The position numbers and the translations under genes were made by a program. The notes beneath the pieces are model-generated. The model saw only the letters and a list, made by a program, of their open reading frames with translations. It had not been told where the DNA came from and did not search any database. Source: Octopus bimaculoides (Eukaryota). From it: DNA of 55,408 nt. Of the stretch, positions 5,460-26,570 are shown piece by piece. The stretch is from assembly GCF_001194135.2 (NCBI RefSeq), contig NC_068981.1, positions 73,394,156-73,449,563 on the forward strand. The letters are read 5' to 3'. Every line of letters begins with the position of its first letter. Position 1 is the stretch's first letter.

Positions 5460-7088
5460 TTACGCGTTCTGGACAGACTAGCCAATTGATTCTCATCGAC
5501 CCTGATAGTCTCCGAGAGAACGTCGTCGCTCTTGCCCACTTCTATGCTTCTACAGAACACAGAAATATTGTCCGACTGAAGGCCTTTCGCGTGCTAGGCA
5601 TCCTGCTTCGGTCAACGCTTGATCCAGGACTGCAGCTCAGTCAAGGAGACAAGCTGCGGTGAAGCGTGTCTGACAAACGGTGACCGCCCTTTTCGTCGAC
5701 AAGGAAACGCTGGAGAAGTCGCTGCCCCAGAGTATGTCAGCACATCATCAGCCACGACATCCCTATTCAGCAAGTATTGACAACAGAGAGCATGAACAGC
5801 ACAAAGCGTCCCTTCCACAGAAAACAGAATAGTCGCTCCAGCCCAGCCAGGAGTGAACTGGCGTGAGGCGCGACAATCAAACGGAAATATATGATGAAAG
5901 CGGTGAATACCTTCGCCACTTCTGTCCAGCATTAGATGGATAGCTTTCTCGTAATCCATTTCTAGGCGAGATTGGCCATCCTGCTCGTCATTTCGTCCGA
6001 TTTCTTTTCCACTGAAAATCTGAACCAAACTATCCCCAAGCGATTTAACGAGTCCGTCCGTCCAATGTCACACGTCACTCTTGGGCGGCATGGAATTACC
6101 TCTCCAGGGACAGAGTTGCAGGTTCACTGACTTACCTTGATTGTTTTTCCTTTTTTTTTTGTTTTGTTTTGTTTTGGTCTTGACACTATATTTCCTCAGA
6201 ATTGTGCCGATCATGTGACGATGATGTCGTCCGCGTCCGAGTTCGCATGGGCTGCTCTTCAAAGTCTTTACTTTTCGCAATAGCGGCTCAAGTGTCAGTA
6301 TATAAAGAAGAGATGAGAAGGGACAACATTGACGAACCGAGCGCAAAATAACGAATAGTTTCGTTAGGTGGTCATTCATCGAACCATCGAGTTGGTGTTA
6401 CTCTACATTGCAGTAATGAAACCGAAGAAAAATATGACCGAAACCGGCTGCTGTGAGAACAGCTATCAGGTATTGGTGATCAATCCTATCAAAAACTTTT
6501 AGTCGATCTACATTGATAAGAGCCACGCGCATGCCAGATTTTGTTTTACACACCATCCCTATGATGTGTCGCATGACGTAGAAGTTGTCGAGGAGAGATC
6601 TTGCTTAGAATGACACATTATTGCACATCACCGATCGAACAAATGGCAACCCCTTTATTAATACCTTGGCAAACATTTTAAAATCAGCGTTTAACAGAGT
6701 TATGGACTGAACATTATCAATGTGATCCCCCTTGTTTGGGACCTTTCTTACTATGCCACTGCTCCTCGACTCACGGAGCTGGGAATTCTTCCGTTCTATG
6801 ATTAATTGCGGTAGGTATTAGCGAAGAGGTATTCAAACAAGTCTGGCATGTAAAAGTAAAGCTCATAGAGTAGACCATCTAAACCAGGCAATTTGCCCCT
6901 TACGCAGTAAACCATCTTGCCGAGAGTTGCGACAGGCCGTCGAGGTAGGCTCTGAAATTCATCTTACATTCCGTCCCGCCATTCGTTCCGAACAATCGAA
7001 TGAAATACTGTTTAAAATCTTTACTCATCTCCTTGAGGTTGAGGTACATGCACCTGTAGTGAACCCTGGCGGTTAAGCAGGAAAGCAA
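5460..7088 (-). pseudogene. Degenerate Tx1/L1-clade LINE ORF2 fragment (pre-RT linker, RT, post-RT region) with many stops/frameshifts and an internal deletion
   Basis: Minus-strand translation gives, in order: YFIRLFG, GKLPGLDGLLYELY..MPDLF, SITLLNADFKMFAKVL, ALINVD, RSVRQCCPFSSLLYILTLEPLLRK, WTDGLVKSLG/IVWF, LERLFCFLWKG. These are colinear L1/Tx1 ORF2 motifs (GKSPGxDG, ITLLNxDxKIxAKxL, RGVRQGCPLSPLL, FFWxG). Confidence 0.9.
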
Positions 7089-7126
7089 AACAGTAAAGGG
7101 ATTTAACGAGAGTCATCTCCCTCGAC

Positions 7127-7161
7127 CTTCTAGAAAGTTCTCGAACATTCTCGAAGTTTCC
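7127..7161. promoter_or_regulatory. Perfect 7-unit heat-shock element (HSF1 binding array)
   Basis: TTC-ta-GAA-ag-TTC-tc-GAA-ca-TTC-tc-GAA-gt-TTC at 7128-7160: seven alternating nGAAn pentamers with exact 2-nt spacing and differing spacer bases. Confidence 0.9.
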
Positions 7162-7198
7162 GGTTGACGTGGAAGTCGGGGACTTCCAGTTCATCCCT

Positions 7199-7237
7199 TA
7201 TATAAAGGAACAAATTTCTAAATTCGCACCACTCAGT
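7199..7237 (+). promoter_or_regulatory. TATA box (TATATAAAG, 7199-7207) with Inr-like TCAGT (7233-7237)
   Basis: Canonical motifs about 40 bp downstream of the HSE; TSS expected at ~7228-7235. Confidence 0.7.
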
Positions 7238-7403
7238 GTCTGTCTGTCTGCTCAGTTGATTTTGTATCGTGATTTCCATTGATTTTTGCATAGTGACGGA
7301 CAAGTTGTTCTTTGTTTACCATTTGTTGGCGATTGTTTGACTTGTCGTATGACTTACTTTTGTTGTGTTTTCTCCTCCAGTGGGGACGAAAATTACAGTA
7401 AGT

Positions 7404-8106
7404 ATGGAGGAAGTGCAAGTGCGTGCTGAGAGCTACGCTTCAATAGCAGGCAGAGGTAACATTGCAGCAACGGTGAGACAGCTAGAAGTCAGGGAGGTAC
7501 CAGTCGACCTCGAAATAGTGAGAAACAGCAAAAAAATTGATAGAGAAAGAAGGGTCAAGATTAAAATTAACACCGCCGGAAGAAATAACAAGAAGCAAAA
7601 ACGAAAAAATAGTGGTTTACAGAAAGCTTTCACTAGCAAGTAAGAAAATAGAAATGACGAACGAAGAAGATTTGGAAGAATGCTTGCAAAAAATAAGTCA
7701 CATGGAATACTACTGTAGCGGAAGGAAGTTTGGTACTGTGGAGGTGCGCTTCCCGACTGTGGAGGAGGCAGCAAGCAACTCCAATGTAACCTTGAAAACC
7801 GAAAAATGGGCACTCCTGCCAATATACCTTGGGAAGCGAGTGGCGAGAGTGAGGATTGGCAGGGTTCCCCCAGAGATTAACGAGATGTGGCTGCTTCCAG
7901 CTATTCTAATAGACACAAAGGAAGACCCCCAAGTGCTGCAGGTAAGCCGTACTAAACAACTTAACTGTTGGGGATATGGTCTGGAAGCCATAATCCTGGC
8001 CACCGCACCAGACATACAAGAAATAACAGAAGAGATAGAGTTTCCAGAAGACGTGAAGCTGTGTATGGTAGTAGAGGGAAGACCGCCCACATGCTACCAC
8101 TGCGGT
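7404..8106 (+). mobile_element. Tx1/L1-type LINE ORF1 (RRM-like region plus truncated CCHC zinc knuckle), open except for one +1 frameshift in an A7 run (7530-7536)
   Basis: ATG at 7404 (MEEVQVRAESYASIAG...); joining to the 7537 frame gives ...GTVEVRFPT...RVARVRIGRVPPEI...MVVEGRPPTCYHCG, the V.I..VP and xGxPxTCxxCG pattern of L1/Tx1 ORF1. Confidence 0.8.
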
Positions 8107-8317
8107 TTGTGGATGACCAAGCTGAAACGGATCCTTTTCCGCTTTTTGTGGAAGGGAAAACCACCACTTGCGAGGTGCTCCATCTGCTGCCAAAAACCGT
8201 TTGTTTGCCTCACTTACTTGGAGACATGTGATTGCAATAAATGAATATGTTCATGTAATGTTTCAAGCCTTTCCTTCAATTAACCTTATATGTTAACGCA
8301 TTACCTCCAGTAATAAA
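8107..8317 (+). mobile_element. Tx1/L1 ORF2 post-RT remnant fused in frame to ORF1, then stop (8242-8244) and AATAAA signals (8236-8241, 8312-8317)
   Basis: LWMTKLKRILFRFLWKGKPPLARCSICCQKP matches the same post-RT motif seen in the minus-strand copy (LERLFCFLWKG). Confidence 0.7.
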
Positions 8318-9727
8318 TATGTTATGACTTATTGCAAACGTCTCGCGAATTCCTATTTTATTGTTACTACGTACAAGATGGTGACCCTTCTTTTTCTCAT
8401 GCTCATTAAATTATAGGATGTCACTTAATCGACATCACTATACATCTATTATAGTTCGCAAAAGATCGAATTGTAGATTTATCACCACGTTGCACTTCTA
8501 CCACCCGAGGCCATCGAGCGACTTTCATCCCCTTCGTGTCTTAGAGCACTTACAATCTTCATACTTCGTGTTGAAGAACTGGTCGAGGGCTAATCTCACC
8601 GCAAGTATGTCGGATGTGATGCTTTTTCCAAGTTCCTAATCAAGTCTCCTATTCACTATCAGTACGATTTTACTAAACCTAATTGATTCTACTTTAATCG
8701 TTCTTTTCAGGATGAATCTTCACTTGTTGTCGACGGTTGCCCCCTTCAATGCCTGCTTAACTAATTCGCTAATCTGGTTTCTTTAAGTTCAGTACGCTTT
8801 AAGAGACGCGTTCACCTTTCAGTGACGAAGTACCTGCCTACGAAGCCTATGTAGGGTATCGTGCAGATCACTAATTTGTGGTCTGTGTACCGGACGAATT
8901 TAAAAAGTACATTGTGTTAAATTTGAAACTTGTATTTACTCTGTCATCCACAGCTGTAGAATGAAATACAATTGTTATGCTCTGGTTAAAGTGTTAGTTG
9001 GATATTTTTAATCATGTCTTTTTATACTGCTAGAAACTCTCCTCTAGTAAACTATCTCCAAGCAATCTGATTTTTTTCTGGTGTTAAAGTTCGTTGTAAT
9101 CGCAACTATACAAATTTTAGTAAACTCACCCCTAAGATTGAGTTCACTCACTTTGCAATAAGCTCACACACTTCATGACTTTCTTGCGTTATGGAACTAT
9201 TTTCATTATATCTTTTAAAATGCTAGCTTGTCTAAAGGAAGAATCCTTTTAATTATTTCGTATTATGCTTGATGAAGACTATTGTAGTCCTTTTAACTTC
9301 AACGAAATCTTTACAAATACGACACAATTTTTTTTCTTTTTTTATCTAAGACGAAAATAATCATCAGTCTATTTTTTAATTCAATGTTGCCAACATAAAA
9401 AATTATTGTACTTTACAGCGACGCAATAGAGAAAACGGCTTAGACGAGGACTAGACCTATTCACACTGGTTATTCATTACAAACAACAATGAAAGCCTGA
9501 AGTAGAGTAACAGCGATGAGTTAAGTAACAGTGAAGCAAATTCTGAATGTTAATTAGTTGTAATAAATGTGTGTTTATGTCATCAGTTCGTACCTATTCC
9601 GGTTCGTAATTTTTATTTAAGTCACCACACAAATATTACTGCTTAAAGAAATTTGTGTTTGACTTTTGAGATGTTGAAAATAATTTATATTAAATTAATG
9701 TTTTAGTTTTAAGATATGTATGTTTTT

Positions 9728-11621: not shown

Positions 11622-12130
11622 CATCATCATCATCATCGTCGTTTAACGTCCGCTTTCCATGCTAGCATGGGTTGGACGATTTGACTGAGGACTGGTGGAC
11701 CAGGAGGCGACACCAGGCTCCAATCTGATTTGGCACAATTTCTACAGCTGGATGCCCTTCCTAACGTCAACCACTCAGAGAGTGTAGTGGGTGCTTTTAC
11801 GTACCACCGGCACGAGGGCCAGTCAGGCGGTAATGGCGACGGCCACGCTCCAAATGGTGTAGTTTATGTTCCACCTGCACAGGAGCCAGTCCATCGGCAC
11901 TGGCAACGATCTGGCTCGAATGTCTTTTCACGTGCCACTGGCACAAGTAAGGCGACGTTGGTAACGATCACGCTGTTGCTATTTACGCGCCACCGGCATG
12001 GAAGCCAGACAGATGCTTTGGTAACGATCGCGCTCAGACGGTGCTCTTAGTGCTCCACTGGTACAGGTGCCATCACGACTTCGCTTTCGCTTGCCCTAAC
12101 AGGTCTTCGCAAGCCGAGTTTAGTGTTCCT
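11622..12130 (-). mobile_element. 5'-truncated RTE LINE 3' end (family B): tandem units, GGAAGGGCATCCAGC domain, tail and (GAT)n
   Basis: Ends in ...CCAACCCATGCTAGCATGGAAAGCGGACGTTAAACGACGATGATG. Its 5' end (AGGTCTTCGCAAGC, ~12101-12114) is colinear with the ORF2-bearing copy at 28142-28545. Confidence 0.85.
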
Positions 12131-23483: not shown

Positions 23484-25256
23484 TTAGTTGGCAACAAGTA
23501 AATGATGGAATTGGTTGTTATATGCAGGATTGCCTATGTTGCTCAGAGCTTCTATGAAAGACTTACGACTGTCTGGGAGTAAAGGGTTGCTAGGACTTAA
23601 AGTGTTGGGCATAAAATCAGTGAAGGGCAAGCTGCCATGAGCTGGAGACAGTTGAAAAGGGTTTGAAAGTGGTGACTGGTAAAAATCCCGAAGAGTCAAA
23701 CCAGTTGATGATGGAGAGGGCAAAGGTGGTTGAGGAGATGATTGGTGTGGTTGTGTTTGAGAATTTCCTGGTTGTAAGAGAGTCTGATTGAGTTGTTGGT
23801 GGTGAGGTAGTGGAGAAGTTGCTGTCACATCATGGGAGGGTACTGGTGAGAGCAGAGTTGACTGAGAAGCAACTATTGGTTTTTGATTCACAGATGCCAT
23901 ATATCTATGATGTGGATGCTGCACTTGCTGTTGCTGTGGTTGTTGATGGTGTTGCTCAAATAAAAATTCAATCCTTGGATCACGGGGAGAGAGAGATCTG
24001 GGTCGGGTGGCCAGTGTTGTGCCAGGGGCTGATGAACCTGGGCTAGGGTGACCAAAACCCATGCCAACTCGAAGTGCAGAATTAGCTAAAGTTGGTGAAA
24101 CACCAACTGCAGGTACATTTGTTTGGGGAGCAGGTCCAATTAGACTACCACCAGTAGGGGTCACTGGTGAAGACTGGAGGGATGAACCAGCAGCTCTTTG
24201 TCGGAAGTAGTTTCGAAATTCAATAGGAGATAATCTAGTTGGACGTTTCACCTGGCTCTTCAGTTTGGTTGAGCCAAACTTAGTCTGTGCAAATGATGAA
24301 GCTGTGAATTGTGGAGATGTCAGGTTTGGTTTGGTTAGAAAAGATGTAGGCCTTGAGGCAATGACAGGAGTAGCACTGGTAATGACCGGACTTGACAGCT
24401 GACAAGATGGGACAGTTGCAGAAGGAGAAACTGAAGCTGCAGCAGTTGAAATGTTAGTATTACTTGAATTGTTAGCATTGTTACTGGTGGTGTTGGTACT
24501 GTTGTTGTTGTTGTTGTTGTTATTATCATTGTTATTATTATTATTATTATGATTATTAATGTTGTTGTTGTTGTTATTAGATATGGACAAATTAGATATG
24601 GCAGCAACTGTAGTAGAAACAACTTCAGGAGATGGAGCATGAACAACAGTAACTGTTGTTGAACCAGGAGCCTGATTACCAACTGTGGACATATTAGTAC
24701 TTGCAGCTGAATTGAAGAGAGTAGTGGACGGGGAAGCGGCTGTACTCCAACCAGCAGGTGAAGTTGGGGATGACGGAGATAGACTTAAACTACTCAATGA
24801 AGATGATACAGAATCTATTGGCTTAAAGCACTGAGCTTCTGGGTTGAAGCCTTTGTTTGCTGCCTGTACTTCATGATCAACAGTATCAAGAAGTTCATCA
24901 TCTTTCTTGTCACTATATAAAATTTTGACAGTGCCTTTCTCGCTAAGACGGTATGACACTTCAGACGGATCAATCCAAAGAGTTAAATCAGCTGGTAGAT
25001 AACTTCTGACTTCACCAATCTCTAAGCCGCTTCCATAAACAGCCTTCTCAATATCAGGATCGACTTTTTCTCCATTAACTCGAATACATCGGTAGGCTGA
25101 ACCCTTATTGGGTCGTTCAGGATACCAGTGGCCATTAAATTTTGTTTTCATACGCTTTTCAAGTTCATGACCAAACATATCCACACGTCGTCGGGGAAGT
25201 TTGTTGTAAAGATAGGAAATAATGAAGTTAAGAGCTACAGACACTTCAACATGCAT
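23484..25256 (-). CDS. Tob: Tob (transducer of ERBB2, BTG/Tob family) anti-proliferative protein / CAF1-CCR4-NOT deadenylase adaptor, 590 aa, single coding exon
   Basis: N-terminal BTG/APRO domain with Box A (HWYPERPNKGSAYRCIRVN) and Box B (LPADLTLWIDPSEVSYRLSE). Also a PAM2 motif (FNPEAQCFKP, aa 137-146), the Tob-specific FAQTKFGSTKLK motif, and a C-terminus YNNQFHHLLVAN resembling vertebrate Tob ...QQFQPVMAN. In-frame TAA lies 6 nt upstream of the ATG; context is AAACATG. Confidence 0.97.
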   Translation of the reverse strand: MHVEVSVALNFIISYLYNKLPRRRVDMFGHELEKRMKTKFNGHWYPERPNKGSAYRCIRVNGEKVDPDIEKAVYGSGLEIGEVRSYLPADLTLWIDPSEVSYRLSEKGTVKILYSDKKDDELLDTVDHEVQAANKGFNPEAQCFKPIDSVSSSLSSLSLSPSSPTSPAGWSTAASPSTTLFNSAASTNMSTVGNQAPGSTTVTVVHAPSPEVVSTTVAAISNLSISNNNNNNINNHNNNNNNNDNNNNNNNNSTNTTSNNANNSSNTNISTAAASVSPSATVPSCQLSSPVITSATPVIASRPTSFLTKPNLTSPQFTASSFAQTKFGSTKLKSQVKRPTRLSPIEFRNYFRQRAAGSSLQSSPVTPTGGSLIGPAPQTNVPAVGVSPTLANSALRVGMGFGHPSPGSSAPGTTLATRPRSLSPRDPRIEFLFEQHHQQPQQQQVQHPHHRYMASVNQKPIVASQSTLLSPVPSHDVTATSPLPHHQQLNQTLLQPGNSQTQPHQSSPQPPLPSPSSTGLTLRDFYQSPLSNPFQLSPAHGSLPFTDFMPNTLSPSNPLLPDSRKSFIEALSNIGNPAYNNQFHHLLVAN

Positions 25257-26408: not shown

Positions 26409-26570
26409 ATCATCATCATCATCGTTTAACGTCCGCTTTCCATGCTAGCATGGGTTGGACGATTTGACTGAGGACTGGTGAAACCGGATGGCAACACCAG
26501 GCTCCAGTCTGATTTGGCAGAGTTTCTACAGCTGGATGCCCTTCCTAACGCCAACCACTCAGAGAGTGTA
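26409..26570 (-). mobile_element. Short 3' fragment of family B (RTE tail)
   Basis: CATCATCATCGTTTAACGTCCGCTTTCCATGCTAGCATGGGTTGGACG...GGATGCCCTTCCTAACGCCAACCACTC. Confidence 0.9.

What the first reader, a model, noticed from the sequence alone, without database searches (positions are those of the whole stretch)
7127..8317. Candidate heat-shock-inducible retroelement gene: perfect 7-unit HSE + TATA + Inr driving a Tx1-type ORF1
Seen: TTC-ta-GAA-ag-TTC-tc-GAA-ca-TTC-tc-GAA-gt-TTC (21 of 21 consensus positions, with spacers that differ, so not a slippage repeat). TATATAAAG follows about 40 bp later and TCAGT about 30 bp beyond that, then a 5' UTR, an ORF1 starting at 7404 and two AATAAA. Established: this is the architecture of hsp70-class HSF1 promoters; LINEs normally use internal promoters because target-primed reverse transcription cannot copy sequence upstream of the TSS. 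No HSP gene is present. Inference, two options: (a) a Tx1 family that carries and regenerates an upstream HSE/TATA module, i.e. a stress-activated LINE, or (b) a LINE ORF1 captured behind a host heat-shock promoter, possibly a domesticated stress-induced RNA-binding protein or a repressor/decoy of the family.
Basis: partly seen in the sequence, partly recalled or inferred. Interest (0 to 1): 0.85.

Follow-up and report, generated by a model that had tools for sequence, protein, structure and literature searches.

The report
Heat-shock promoter fused to dead LINE
A textbook heat-shock promoter really does sit just upstream of a jumping-gene (LINE) fragment in the octopus genome, but the fragment is broken, seven related copies lack this promoter, and whether it marks a heat-activated LINE family could not be tested here.

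Summary
There are seven perfect alternating nGAAn units at 7128-7160, TATATAAAG at 7199-7207, Inr-like CCACTCAGT at 7229-7237, and a LINE ORF1 starting at 7404.

The window is Octopus bimaculoides chromosome CM046601.1. The ORF1 belongs to an octopus LINE group of L1/Tx1 type and folds as two RRMs followed by a CCHC knuckle.

This copy is defective:
- It has a +1 frameshift in an A7 run (7530-7536).
- The zinc knuckle is cut after CYHCG (8105).
- The cut end is fused to a 31-codon scrap of ORF2.

Promoter, ORF1 piece and about 240 bp of unassigned 3' sequence form a block of about 1.39 kb (about 7035-8447). This block interrupts an older antisense LINE, so the promoter arrived here by insertion.

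5'UTR homology to two other O. bimaculoides copies starts at about 7250-7252. In the closer copy it starts exactly at a shared TCAGTTG motif, about 90 bp downstream of the HSE. None of seven relatives has an HSE.

Most likely the promoter is non-LINE DNA placed next to a dead LINE piece, giving at most a heat-inducible, non-functional transcript. A heat-activated LINE subfamily is not excluded, because the copy number could not be measured. Domestication is unlikely.

The parts
7035..8447 (+). Inserted block of about 1.39 kb (each boundary known to about 15-25 bp) holding the promoter module, the LINE piece and the unassigned 3' sequence. It interrupts an older antisense LINE.
   Evidence: tblastn of the L001 LINE proteins: pre-RT residues 34-59 map to 8525-8448(-) and residues 67-104 to 7034-6921(-). 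They are collinear, and only 7 residues are unaccounted for. DNA alignment.
7128..7160 (.). Array of seven perfect inverted nGAAn units (HSF-type heat shock element).
7162..7196 (.). Imperfect palindrome GGTTGACGTGGAAGTC-ggg-GACTTCCAGTTCATCC. It contains TGACGTGG (7165-7172), which is CRE/UPRE-like by my recollection of those consensus sequences.
   Evidence: (I2). The motif assignment was not tested.
7199..7207 (+). TATA box TATATAAAG.
7229..7237 (+). Inr-like CCACTCAGT. The TATA-directed start is predicted at A7231 or A7235.
   Evidence: The geometry is read from the sequence; the start site was not measured.
7252..7403 (+). LINE-family 5'UTR, beginning with the Inr-like TCAGTTG. It contains one out-of-frame uATG (7349), and GTAAGT (7398-7403) lies directly before the ATG.
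   Evidence: Homology to L128 starts at TCAGTTG (score 73 against shuffles 39.9+-6.8; the upstream part scores 24 against 27.4+-4.7). Homology to L124 (79 against 49.5+-6.8). TCAGTTG is also in L125.
7404..8105 (+). LINE ORF1 with two RRMs. It has a +1 frameshift in the A7 run at 7530-7536, and its CCHC knuckle is cut after CYHCG.
   Evidence: 41 of 44 family-conserved positions are kept. AlphaFold model pLDDT 87, with tandem-RRM matches in the PDB.
8110..8202 (+). 31-codon scrap of the LINE ORF2 post-RT region (LFRFLWKGKPPLARCSICCQ), read in frame with ORF1. The stop is at 8242-8244.
   Evidence: tblastn to L001 C-terminal residues 95-125, 64.5% identity. blastn to L001 14136-14225, 74% identity.
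8203..8447 (+). Unassigned 3' sequence with AATAAA at 8236-8241 and 8312-8317 and ATTAAA at 8405-8410. It has no poly(A) or microsatellite tail.
   Evidence: It has no match elsewhere in the window or in the related loci. No Rfam hit.
5474..7034 (-). Older LINE, 3' part (pre-RT, RT and post-RT), decayed.
8448..8904 (-). Older LINE, 5' part (end of the endonuclease and start of the pre-RT region). It is 5'-truncated near 8905.

Best explanation
The HSE/TATA module is a genuine HSF-type Pol II promoter by sequence. It stands 90-125 bp upstream of the point where a defective L1/Tx1-type LINE copy begins (TCAGTTG at 7252). I read the module as non-LINE DNA.

Two histories fit. Either the LINE piece landed just downstream of an HSE-bearing sequence that had itself been inserted into an older LINE. 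Or the LINE piece was copied here together with the upstream flank of its source locus, that is, as a read-through or 5'-transduced transcript, or as a DNA fragment captured during break repair.

Predicted behaviour (all inferred):
1. On heat or proteotoxic stress, HSF trimers occupy the seven-unit array and recruit Pol II to the TATA box.
2. Transcription starts at about 7231-7235. The RNA therefore carries the whole LINE 5'UTR and ORF1.
3. The RNA ends at AATAAA 8236 or 8312.
4. The product is non-functional. Translation from ATG 7404 stops at 7641-7643. Even with the frameshift repaired, the protein would be a two-RRM ORF1p with a broken zinc knuckle and no ORF2.

Shown: the motifs, the nested structure, the defects, the limit of 5'UTR homology, and the absence of an HSE in seven relatives. 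Inferred: HSF binding, the start site, inducibility, and the order of the insertions.
For: - The HSE is far beyond chance, and its core positions have changed less than its spacers.
- The ~1.39 kb block interrupts an otherwise collinear older LINE.
- The older LINE is full of stops and frameshifts. The block's ORF1 keeps 41 of 44 conserved positions and has one frameshift. The block is therefore younger.
- 5'UTR homology to L128 starts exactly at TCAGTTG (7252), and nothing upstream of it is similar. The same motif is in L125. Homology to L124 runs over about 7250-7399.
- 0 of 7 relatives (L001, L002, L003, L124, L125, L126, L128) has three or more HSE units with at most 1 mismatch in the upstream sequence available, up to 800 bp (only 240 bp for L003, 538 bp for L125).
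- No close relative of this ORF1 was found. No ORF resembling the promoter or 5'UTR region was found among 5.8 billion proteins.
- The ORF defects are shown.
Against: - Only one copy could be examined, and the relatives are distant (27-53% amino-acid identity). A recently acquired 5' module in this particular subfamily would look exactly the same.
- A chance meeting of a rare seven-unit HSE with a sense-oriented LINE 5' end within about 100 bp, with a TATA box 30-34 bp before an Inr-like site and about 50 bp before the LINE's own Inr, is improbable a priori. That favours some non-random link.
- No significant target-site duplication was found, either for the block or for a nested LINE. The order of events is therefore not resolved.
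- The non-LINE flanks (7035-7251 and 8203-8447) could not be identified with anything.
Confidence: 0.5

Rival explanations
1. Stress-activated LINE subfamily. The HSE/TATA module is an integral 5' part of a young ORF1-bearing (possibly ORF1-only, non-autonomous) L1/Tx1-type subfamily. Its RNA starts at or upstream of about 7061, so the module is copied at each retrotransposition. The window holds one dead copy.
For: - The module lies at least 67 bp inside a block that was inserted as foreign DNA into an older LINE.
- The ORF1 is well preserved.
- HSE core positions show no change while the spacers do, which fits selection in a source element.
- The close, correctly oriented geometry is unlikely by chance.
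- LINE lineages are known to swap 5'UTRs (my own knowledge, not checked here).
Against: - 0 of 7 relatives has an HSE.
- 5'UTR homology stops at TCAGTTG, downstream of the TATA box.
- A TATA/Inr promoter fires downstream of itself, so its transcripts would lose the module.
- No Inr or other start signal was seen near 7061.
- There is no significant TSD and no 3' tail.
- No similar ORF or 5' region is in the protein collections.
Confidence: 0.25
2. Composite element by target-specific insertion. As with Tx1L in the Tx1D transposon, this Tx1-like LINE would preferentially insert at a fixed site just downstream of the promoter of an HSE-bearing repeat 'Z' (7035-~7250 plus ~8250-8447) and borrow its heat-shock promoter.
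For: - The Tx1 clade is known for target specificity, including insertion into DNA transposons (Kojima 2015, PMC4494074).
- The relative L001 sits in (ATT)n on both sides.
- Non-LINE sequence flanks the LINE piece on both sides within the block.
- An 8-mer, CCTTATAT, occurs at 7196 and at 8284.
Against: - The 8-mer is within chance (expected about 0.1-0.3 such matches by my estimate).
- The other relatives are not flanked by Z-like sequence.
Confidence: 0.12
3. Domesticated, heat-inducible ORF1-derived RNA-binding protein or decoy.
For: - The promoter looks complete.
- ORF1 keeps 41 of 44 conserved positions.
- The frameshift lies in a homopolymer and could in principle be an assembly error.
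Against: - The reading frame is broken.
- The zinc knuckle is truncated and fused to an ORF2 scrap.
- The locus is nested in TE debris rather than in a host gene context.
- No exact or near-identical protein is annotated.
Confidence: 0.04
4. Remnant of an hsp gene or pseudogene whose coding part was replaced by the LINE piece.
For: - The promoter has hsp70-class architecture.
- AATAAA and ATTAAA signals lie in the unassigned 3' part.
Against: - No HSP coding remnant exists anywhere in the window.
- The whole unit lies inside an older LINE.
- Octopus hsp promoters could not be fetched for comparison.
Confidence: 0.05

Closest known systems
hsp70-class HSF promoters (e.g. Drosophila hsp70)
   Same: Contiguous inverted nGAAn units lie within about 100 bp upstream of a TATA box, followed by an Inr about 30 nt further on.
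   Different: No chaperone gene follows. The array is longer and more perfect than the 3-5 units I recall for hsp70 promoters. The module lies inside transposon debris.
ONSEN/ATCOPIA78 (Arabidopsis) and the TCN12/TCN3 LTR elements (Cryptococcus)
   Same: These are transposable elements whose own promoter carries HSEs, so host heat-shock signalling activates them (cited in PMC6927752 and PMC12810828).
   Different: Those are LTR elements. Their HSEs sit in U3, which the LTR replication cycle regenerates. A LINE cannot regenerate sequence upstream of its start site. Here the HSE is not shared by relatives.
HSE-bearing Helitrons of Caenorhabditis (Garrigues et al. 2019, PMC6927752)
   Same: A mobile, non-coding DNA carrier supplies HSEs to whatever lies downstream.
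   Different: No Helitron ends or other transposon hallmarks were found for the flanks here, and only one array is present.
Tx1L inserted in Tx1D, and Tx1-9_AMi in Harbinger (Tx1-clade composite elements; Kojima 2015, PMC4494074)
   Same: An L1/Tx1-type LINE sits at a defined place inside another inserted sequence and may depend on flanking transcription.
   Different: Target specificity for the HSE-bearing flank is not shown. Only one instance was seen.
SVA-MAST2 5' transduction subfamily, and HAL1 (ORF1-only L1 derivatives)
   Same: These are non-autonomous derivatives that carry or use an upstream host promoter (SVA-MAST2, cited in PMC4494074) or keep only ORF1 (HAL1, from my own knowledge).
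   Different: Those are multi-copy families with defined junctions. Copy number here is unknown.

Membership tests
HSF-type heat-shock promoter | At least three contiguous inverted nGAAn units | tested here: met
   Seven perfect units at 7128-7160.
HSF-type heat-shock promoter | Core promoter (TATA plus Inr) within about 100 bp downstream of the HSE | tested here: met
   TATATAAAG at 7199-7207 and CCACTCAGT at 7229-7237. This is by sequence only.
HSF-type heat-shock promoter | HSF binding and stress-induced transcription | not testable with these tools
   Needs RNA-seq or CAGE, HSF1 CUT&Tag, or a reporter assay.
HSF-type heat-shock promoter | Drives a chaperone or co-chaperone gene | tested here: not met
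   No HSP70, HSP90, DnaJ or small-HSP coding sequence in the window.
L1/Tx1-type LINE | ORF1 with RRM(s) followed by a CCHC knuckle | tested here: met
   The family has RRM plus CCHC. The model shows two RRMs. In this copy the knuckle is truncated after CYHCG.
L1/Tx1-type LINE | ORF2 with an APE endonuclease, a reverse transcriptase and a C-terminal zf-RVT domain | tested here: not met
   This copy keeps only 31 codons of ORF2. The related full element L001 has Pfam hits to Exo_endo_phos and zf-RVT. Its RT was recognised only by motif reading and did not score in Pfam. This copy is a deletion derivative, not an autonomous element.
L1/Tx1-type LINE | Assignment to the Tx1 clade specifically (RT phylogeny, target specificity) | tested here: inconclusive
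   L001 is flanked by (ATT)n on both sides, a Tx1-like trait. No RT phylogeny was made. The window copy is not in a microsatellite.
L1/Tx1-type LINE | Target-site duplication and a 3' tail from target-primed reverse transcription | tested here: inconclusive
   No significant TSD. No poly(A) or microsatellite tail at the block end.
Stress-responsive TE with HSEs in its own promoter (ONSEN type) | The HSE lies inside the mobilised unit | tested here: inconclusive
   The HSE is at least 67 bp inside the block that interrupts the older LINE. The block may be two nested insertions.
Stress-responsive TE with HSEs in its own promoter (ONSEN type) | The HSE is shared by copies of the family | tested here: not met
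   0 of 7 relatives has one. Close relatives were not available.
Domesticated ORF1-derived host gene | Intact reading frame | tested here: not met
   +1 frameshift at 7530-7536 and a truncated knuckle fused to an ORF2 scrap.
Domesticated ORF1-derived host gene | Single syntenic orthologue under purifying selection | not testable with these tools

The most novel reading that the evidence does not exclude
An octopus L1/Tx1-type LINE subfamily exploits the host heat-shock response. It would do so in one of two ways. It could carry a seven-unit HSE/TATA module in a 5' extension. Or it could insert specifically just downstream of the promoter of an HSE-bearing repeat. To my knowledge this would be the first HSF-wired non-LTR retrotransposon, making heat-triggered LINE transcription in a cephalopod directly testable.
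Probability: 0.3. Interest if true: 0.8.

Novelty: new variant of a known kind. Interest (0 to 1): 0.42.

Why it matters
HSE-carrying transposons are known among LTR elements (ONSEN, TCN12/TCN3) and Helitrons. I found no LINE example in the literature searches made here.

A LINE cannot regenerate an upstream promoter, so a LINE family tied to an HSF promoter would need an unusual solution. It could start transcription upstream of the module, use repeated modules, or insert specifically behind a promoter. Octopus LINE activity has drawn interest in the brain (PMC9115989, listed but not read), so a stress-inducible LINE would matter there.

If this locus is a one-off, it is only a likely heat-inducible non-coding transcript from transposon debris. 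It would then be a useful caution that perfect promoter motifs can sit in dead DNA.

Tried and rejected
- **Other copies in the window.** None found.
- **Other copies in public protein collections.**
  - The repaired ORF1 gave one hit at 52% identity.
  - A family profile gave four hits.
  - A concatenated translation of the stop-free reading-frame stretches of 7042-7640, both strands, gave nothing at E<=10.
  - The exact ORF product is not on record.
- **HSE pattern in metagenome contigs.** It returned at least 120 contigs, none related beyond the motif itself.
- **Target-site duplication of the block.** The best candidate is a 9-bp core with 6 of 9 matches, not above shuffles.
- **TSD of a nested LINE.** The 8-mer CCTTATAT is within chance.
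- **Terminal inverted repeats or MITE structure.** Not significant.
- **Helitron-like ends.** There is a 6-bp hairpin at 8417-8436 but no CTRR end. I rejected this by eye.
- **Twin priming.** Rejected, because the sense-strand piece is ORF1 plus a post-RT scrap, not the segment adjacent to the truncation point of the older LINE.
- **Mouse-L1-like monomer repeats in the 5' region.** No internal repeat found.
- **Tandem-repeat origin of the HSE.** TRF finds nothing, and the changes are skewed to the spacers.
- **CpG depletion as an age or methylation marker.** Uninformative: observed/expected is about 1 in the old LINE too.
- **Rfam and bacterial-type promoter scans.** Nothing found.
- **Pfam on the window ORFs.** No significant hit.
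- **5'UTR DNA similarity to L001, L002 and L003.** Not above shuffles.
- **Multiple alignment around TCAGTTG.** Uninformative.
- **Orthologous-locus comparison through the Tob gene.** Impossible: the 10-kb flank limit falls short of the 16-kb distance, and the exact-match look-up only returned the window's own assembly.
Full report

Yes. The array TTCtaGAAagTTCtcGAAcaTTCtcGAAgtTTC occupies 7128-7160 with no mismatch to seven alternating nGAAn units. Dinucleotide-preserving shuffles gave 0.00 matches even with three mismatches allowed. All five perfect 3-unit HSEs in the 55-kb window lie inside this array. Base composition predicts 7e-8 such arrays per window.

Tandem Repeats Finder does not call it a repeat. 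If it is read as three 10-bp units, 0 of 18 core positions but 5 of 12 spacer positions differ (Fisher p=0.0056). The GAA/TTC positions have therefore been kept while the spacers drifted.

TATATAAAG is at 7199-7207. CCACTCAGT is at 7229-7237, with candidate start bases 30 and 34 nt after the T of TATAAA. The ATG is at 7404, and AATAAA occurs at 8236-8241 and 8312-8317. Between the HSE and the TATA box lies an imperfect palindrome containing TGACGTGG (7165-7172).

Seven-unit perfect HSE arrays are not unique in nature. None is related to this locus beyond the motif.

**2. Where the window comes from**

A BTG/Tob-family gene at 23487-25256(-) (Pfam BTG) is an exact match to a protein on Octopus bimaculoides GCA_001194135.2, CM046601.1. 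The fetched locus is 100% identical to the window. Window position + 73,394,155 gives the record position.

**3. What the ORF is**

A full HMMER search of 1.84 billion representative proteins found 416 relatives (112 at E<=1e-10). Every one whose source could be read is from O. bimaculoides, O. sinensis or O. vulgaris, or from unnamed sequencing-run (Logan) assemblies.

Full-length members share this layout:
- an N-terminus of the form M..YA..A;
- an EG..KL.PPEE segment;
- a conserved core;
- a CCHC knuckle (Pfam zf-CCHC in P0002).

An AlphaFold2 model of the repaired window ORF1, built with 78 relatives, has mean pLDDT 87. Its best PDB matches are tandem-RRM proteins such as HuC/HuD, IMP3 RRM12 and hnRNP A1 UP1. 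ORF1 is therefore two RRMs plus CCHC.

In O. sinensis locus L001, such an ORF1 is followed by an ORF2. That ORF2 has an APE-type endonuclease (Pfam Exo_endo_phos), RT motifs and a C-terminal zf-RVT domain. The element is flanked by (ATT)n on both sides. This microsatellite targeting is a habit described for the Tx1 clade (Kojima 2015, PMC4494074).

'L1/Tx1-type' is therefore reasonable. I made no RT phylogeny, so membership of the Tx1 clade itself is not established.

**4. The copy is defective**

- The frame that starts at ATG 7404 stops at 7641-7643.
- The family sequence continues in the +1 frame from 7537. Removing one A from the A7 run at 7530-7536 restores ...VRNSKK-LIEKEGSRLKLTPPEE..., which matches the relatives.
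- After CYHCG (8105) the knuckle's H and last C are missing.
- The frame instead runs into LFRFLWKGKPPLARCSICCQ (8110-8202). This is the post-RT region of ORF2: 64.5% amino-acid identity to L001 residues 95-125 and 74% nucleotide identity.
- The frame stops at 8242-8244.

Up to the truncation, ORF1 keeps 41 of 44 family-conserved positions. Two of the three misses are the deleted H and C. The copy has therefore decayed little since it was functional. It remains an internally deleted, non-autonomous fragment.

**5. The surroundings change the picture**

tblastn with the L001 proteins shows an older, decayed LINE on the minus strand that the finding splits in two:

| L001 segment | Window position (minus strand) |
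|---|---|
| Endonuclease residues 151-237 | 8904-8645 |
| Pre-RT residues 1-59 | 8608-8448 |
| Pre-RT residues 67-171 | 7034-6772 |
| RT and post-RT | down to 5474 |

Only seven reference residues are unaccounted for across a 1,413-bp interruption. About 7035-8447 is therefore an inserted block of about 1.39 kb. It holds the promoter module, the LINE piece and about 240 bp of unassigned 3' sequence.

The HSE lies at least 67 bp inside the block. The promoter is thus not an ancestral host promoter at this site.

I could not find a significant target-site duplication, terminal inverted repeats or an RNA-family match. The block has no poly(A) or microsatellite tail. How the block was inserted, and whether it came as one piece or two, stays open.

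**6. Does the promoter belong to the LINE?**

I obtained upstream DNA for seven relatives:

| Locus | Source |
|---|---|
| L001 | O. sinensis |
| L002 | O. vulgaris |
| L003, L125, L126 | Logan assemblies |
| L124, L128 | O. bimaculoides |

None has even three HSE units with at most one mismatch in the upstream sequence available. That was up to 800 bp, but only 240 bp for L003 and 538 bp for L125.

The window's 5'UTR is nonetheless homologous to the 5'UTRs of the two O. bimaculoides copies:
- L124: score 79 against shuffles 49.5+-6.8, with the well-aligned part at about 7250-7399. blastn gives 82.5% over 40 nt.
- L128: score 73 against shuffles 39.9+-6.8.

With L128 the homology begins exactly at a shared Inr-like TCAGTTG (window 7252, L128 5439). 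The sequences upstream of that point show no similarity (24 against 27.4+-4.7). The same heptamer is in L125.

The shared LINE sequence therefore starts about 50 bp downstream of the TATA box and about 90 bp downstream of the HSE. On this evidence the module is flank, not LINE.

**7. What could not be tested**

No protein closer than 52-64% identity, over part of the sequence only, exists in the collections. A query made from the translated reading frames of the promoter and 5'UTR region found nothing.

No nucleotide search of an octopus genome was possible with these tools.

**8. Explanation and rivals**

Best explanation (0.5): an HSF-type promoter on non-LINE DNA has been placed next to a young but dead LINE fragment. 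This happened either by nested insertion or by co-copying of a source locus's upstream flank.

On stress, HSF would bind the array, and Pol II would start about 7231-7235 and read through the complete LINE 5'UTR and the broken ORF1 to AATAAA. These steps are inferred from the motifs only.

Rivals:
- A subfamily that truly carries the module (0.25). The module's position inside the block, the selection-like pattern in the HSE and the improbability of the geometry arising by chance favour it. The relatives and the position of the TATA box relative to the start site count against it.
- A Tx1L/Tx1D-like composite, in which the LINE targets an HSE-bearing repeat (0.12).
- An hsp pseudogene remnant (0.05).
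- A domesticated gene (0.04).

**9. Comparison with what is known**

HSE-bearing mobile elements are documented for LTR retrotransposons: ONSEN, and TCN12/TCN3 (PMC12810828). They are also documented for Caenorhabditis Helitrons (PMC6927752). My literature searches turned up no LINE example.

The locus works like an hsp70-class promoter by sequence. It fails the 'shared by family copies' test for an ONSEN-type element and the 'intact ORF' test for a domesticated gene.

**10. Verdict**

- Observation: confirmed.
- Interpretation: partly supported.
- Novelty: at most a new variant of a known kind (a transposon associated with HSEs).
- Interest: moderate (0.42). It would rise to about 0.8 if a genome BLAST shows a repeated HSE-LINE junction, which I put at about 0.3.

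Noticed in passing
window 23487-25256 (-): Intact single-exon BTG/Tob-family gene of 590 aa (Pfam BTG, E=8e-38). It is the only clear host gene seen in the window. Its exact match identified the window as O. bimaculoides CM046601.1.
   Followed up: yes
L001 9720-9778 and 15345-15385: The full-length relative LINE in O. sinensis is flanked by (ATT)n microsatellite on both sides. This suggests microsatellite-specific integration, as in the Tx1-clade families Kibi and Koshi.
   Followed up: partly
window 7165-7172 (within the palindrome 7162-7196): TGACGTGG, a CRE/UPRE-like octamer by my recollection, sits between the HSE and the TATA box inside a 16+16 nt imperfect palindrome. It may be a second stress-factor site.
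   Followed up: no
window 7349-7429 and 7398-7403: The 5'UTR holds one out-of-frame uATG, whose 26-codon uORF overlaps the ORF1 ATG. A perfect splice-donor-like GTAAGT lies immediately before the ATG, and an acceptor-like ttttctcctccag is at 7368-7380.
   Followed up: no
L125 1-545: A Logan contig shows the CCHC end of one ORF1 followed, about 190 nt later, by a new TCAGTTG-initiated 5'UTR and ORF1. Elements of this group can therefore lie head to tail.
   Followed up: no
window 11626-11705, 26409-26488, 28143-28222, 49511-49590; also 957-1033 and seven more sites: Two families of short dispersed repeats, probably octopus SINEs. One begins with (ATC)n followed by GTTTAACGTCCGCTTTCCATGCTAGCATGGGTTGGACG. 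Another shows GGCAAAGTCGACC...GGAATTTGAACTCAGAAC.
   Followed up: no
L004-L123 (metagenome contigs): At least 120 metagenome contigs carry a perfect array of seven or more HSE units, some with several arrays per contig (for example L038, L035, L068). I did not examine what they flank.
   Followed up: no
L124 5400-5690: A palindromic, MITE-like inverted-repeat structure of about 290 bp lies directly upstream of another O. bimaculoides copy of this LINE group.
   Followed up: no
window 8417-8436: A 6-bp stem hairpin, GATGTC-acttaatc-GACATC, lies just inside the right end of the inserted block. It is probably chance.
   Followed up: partly
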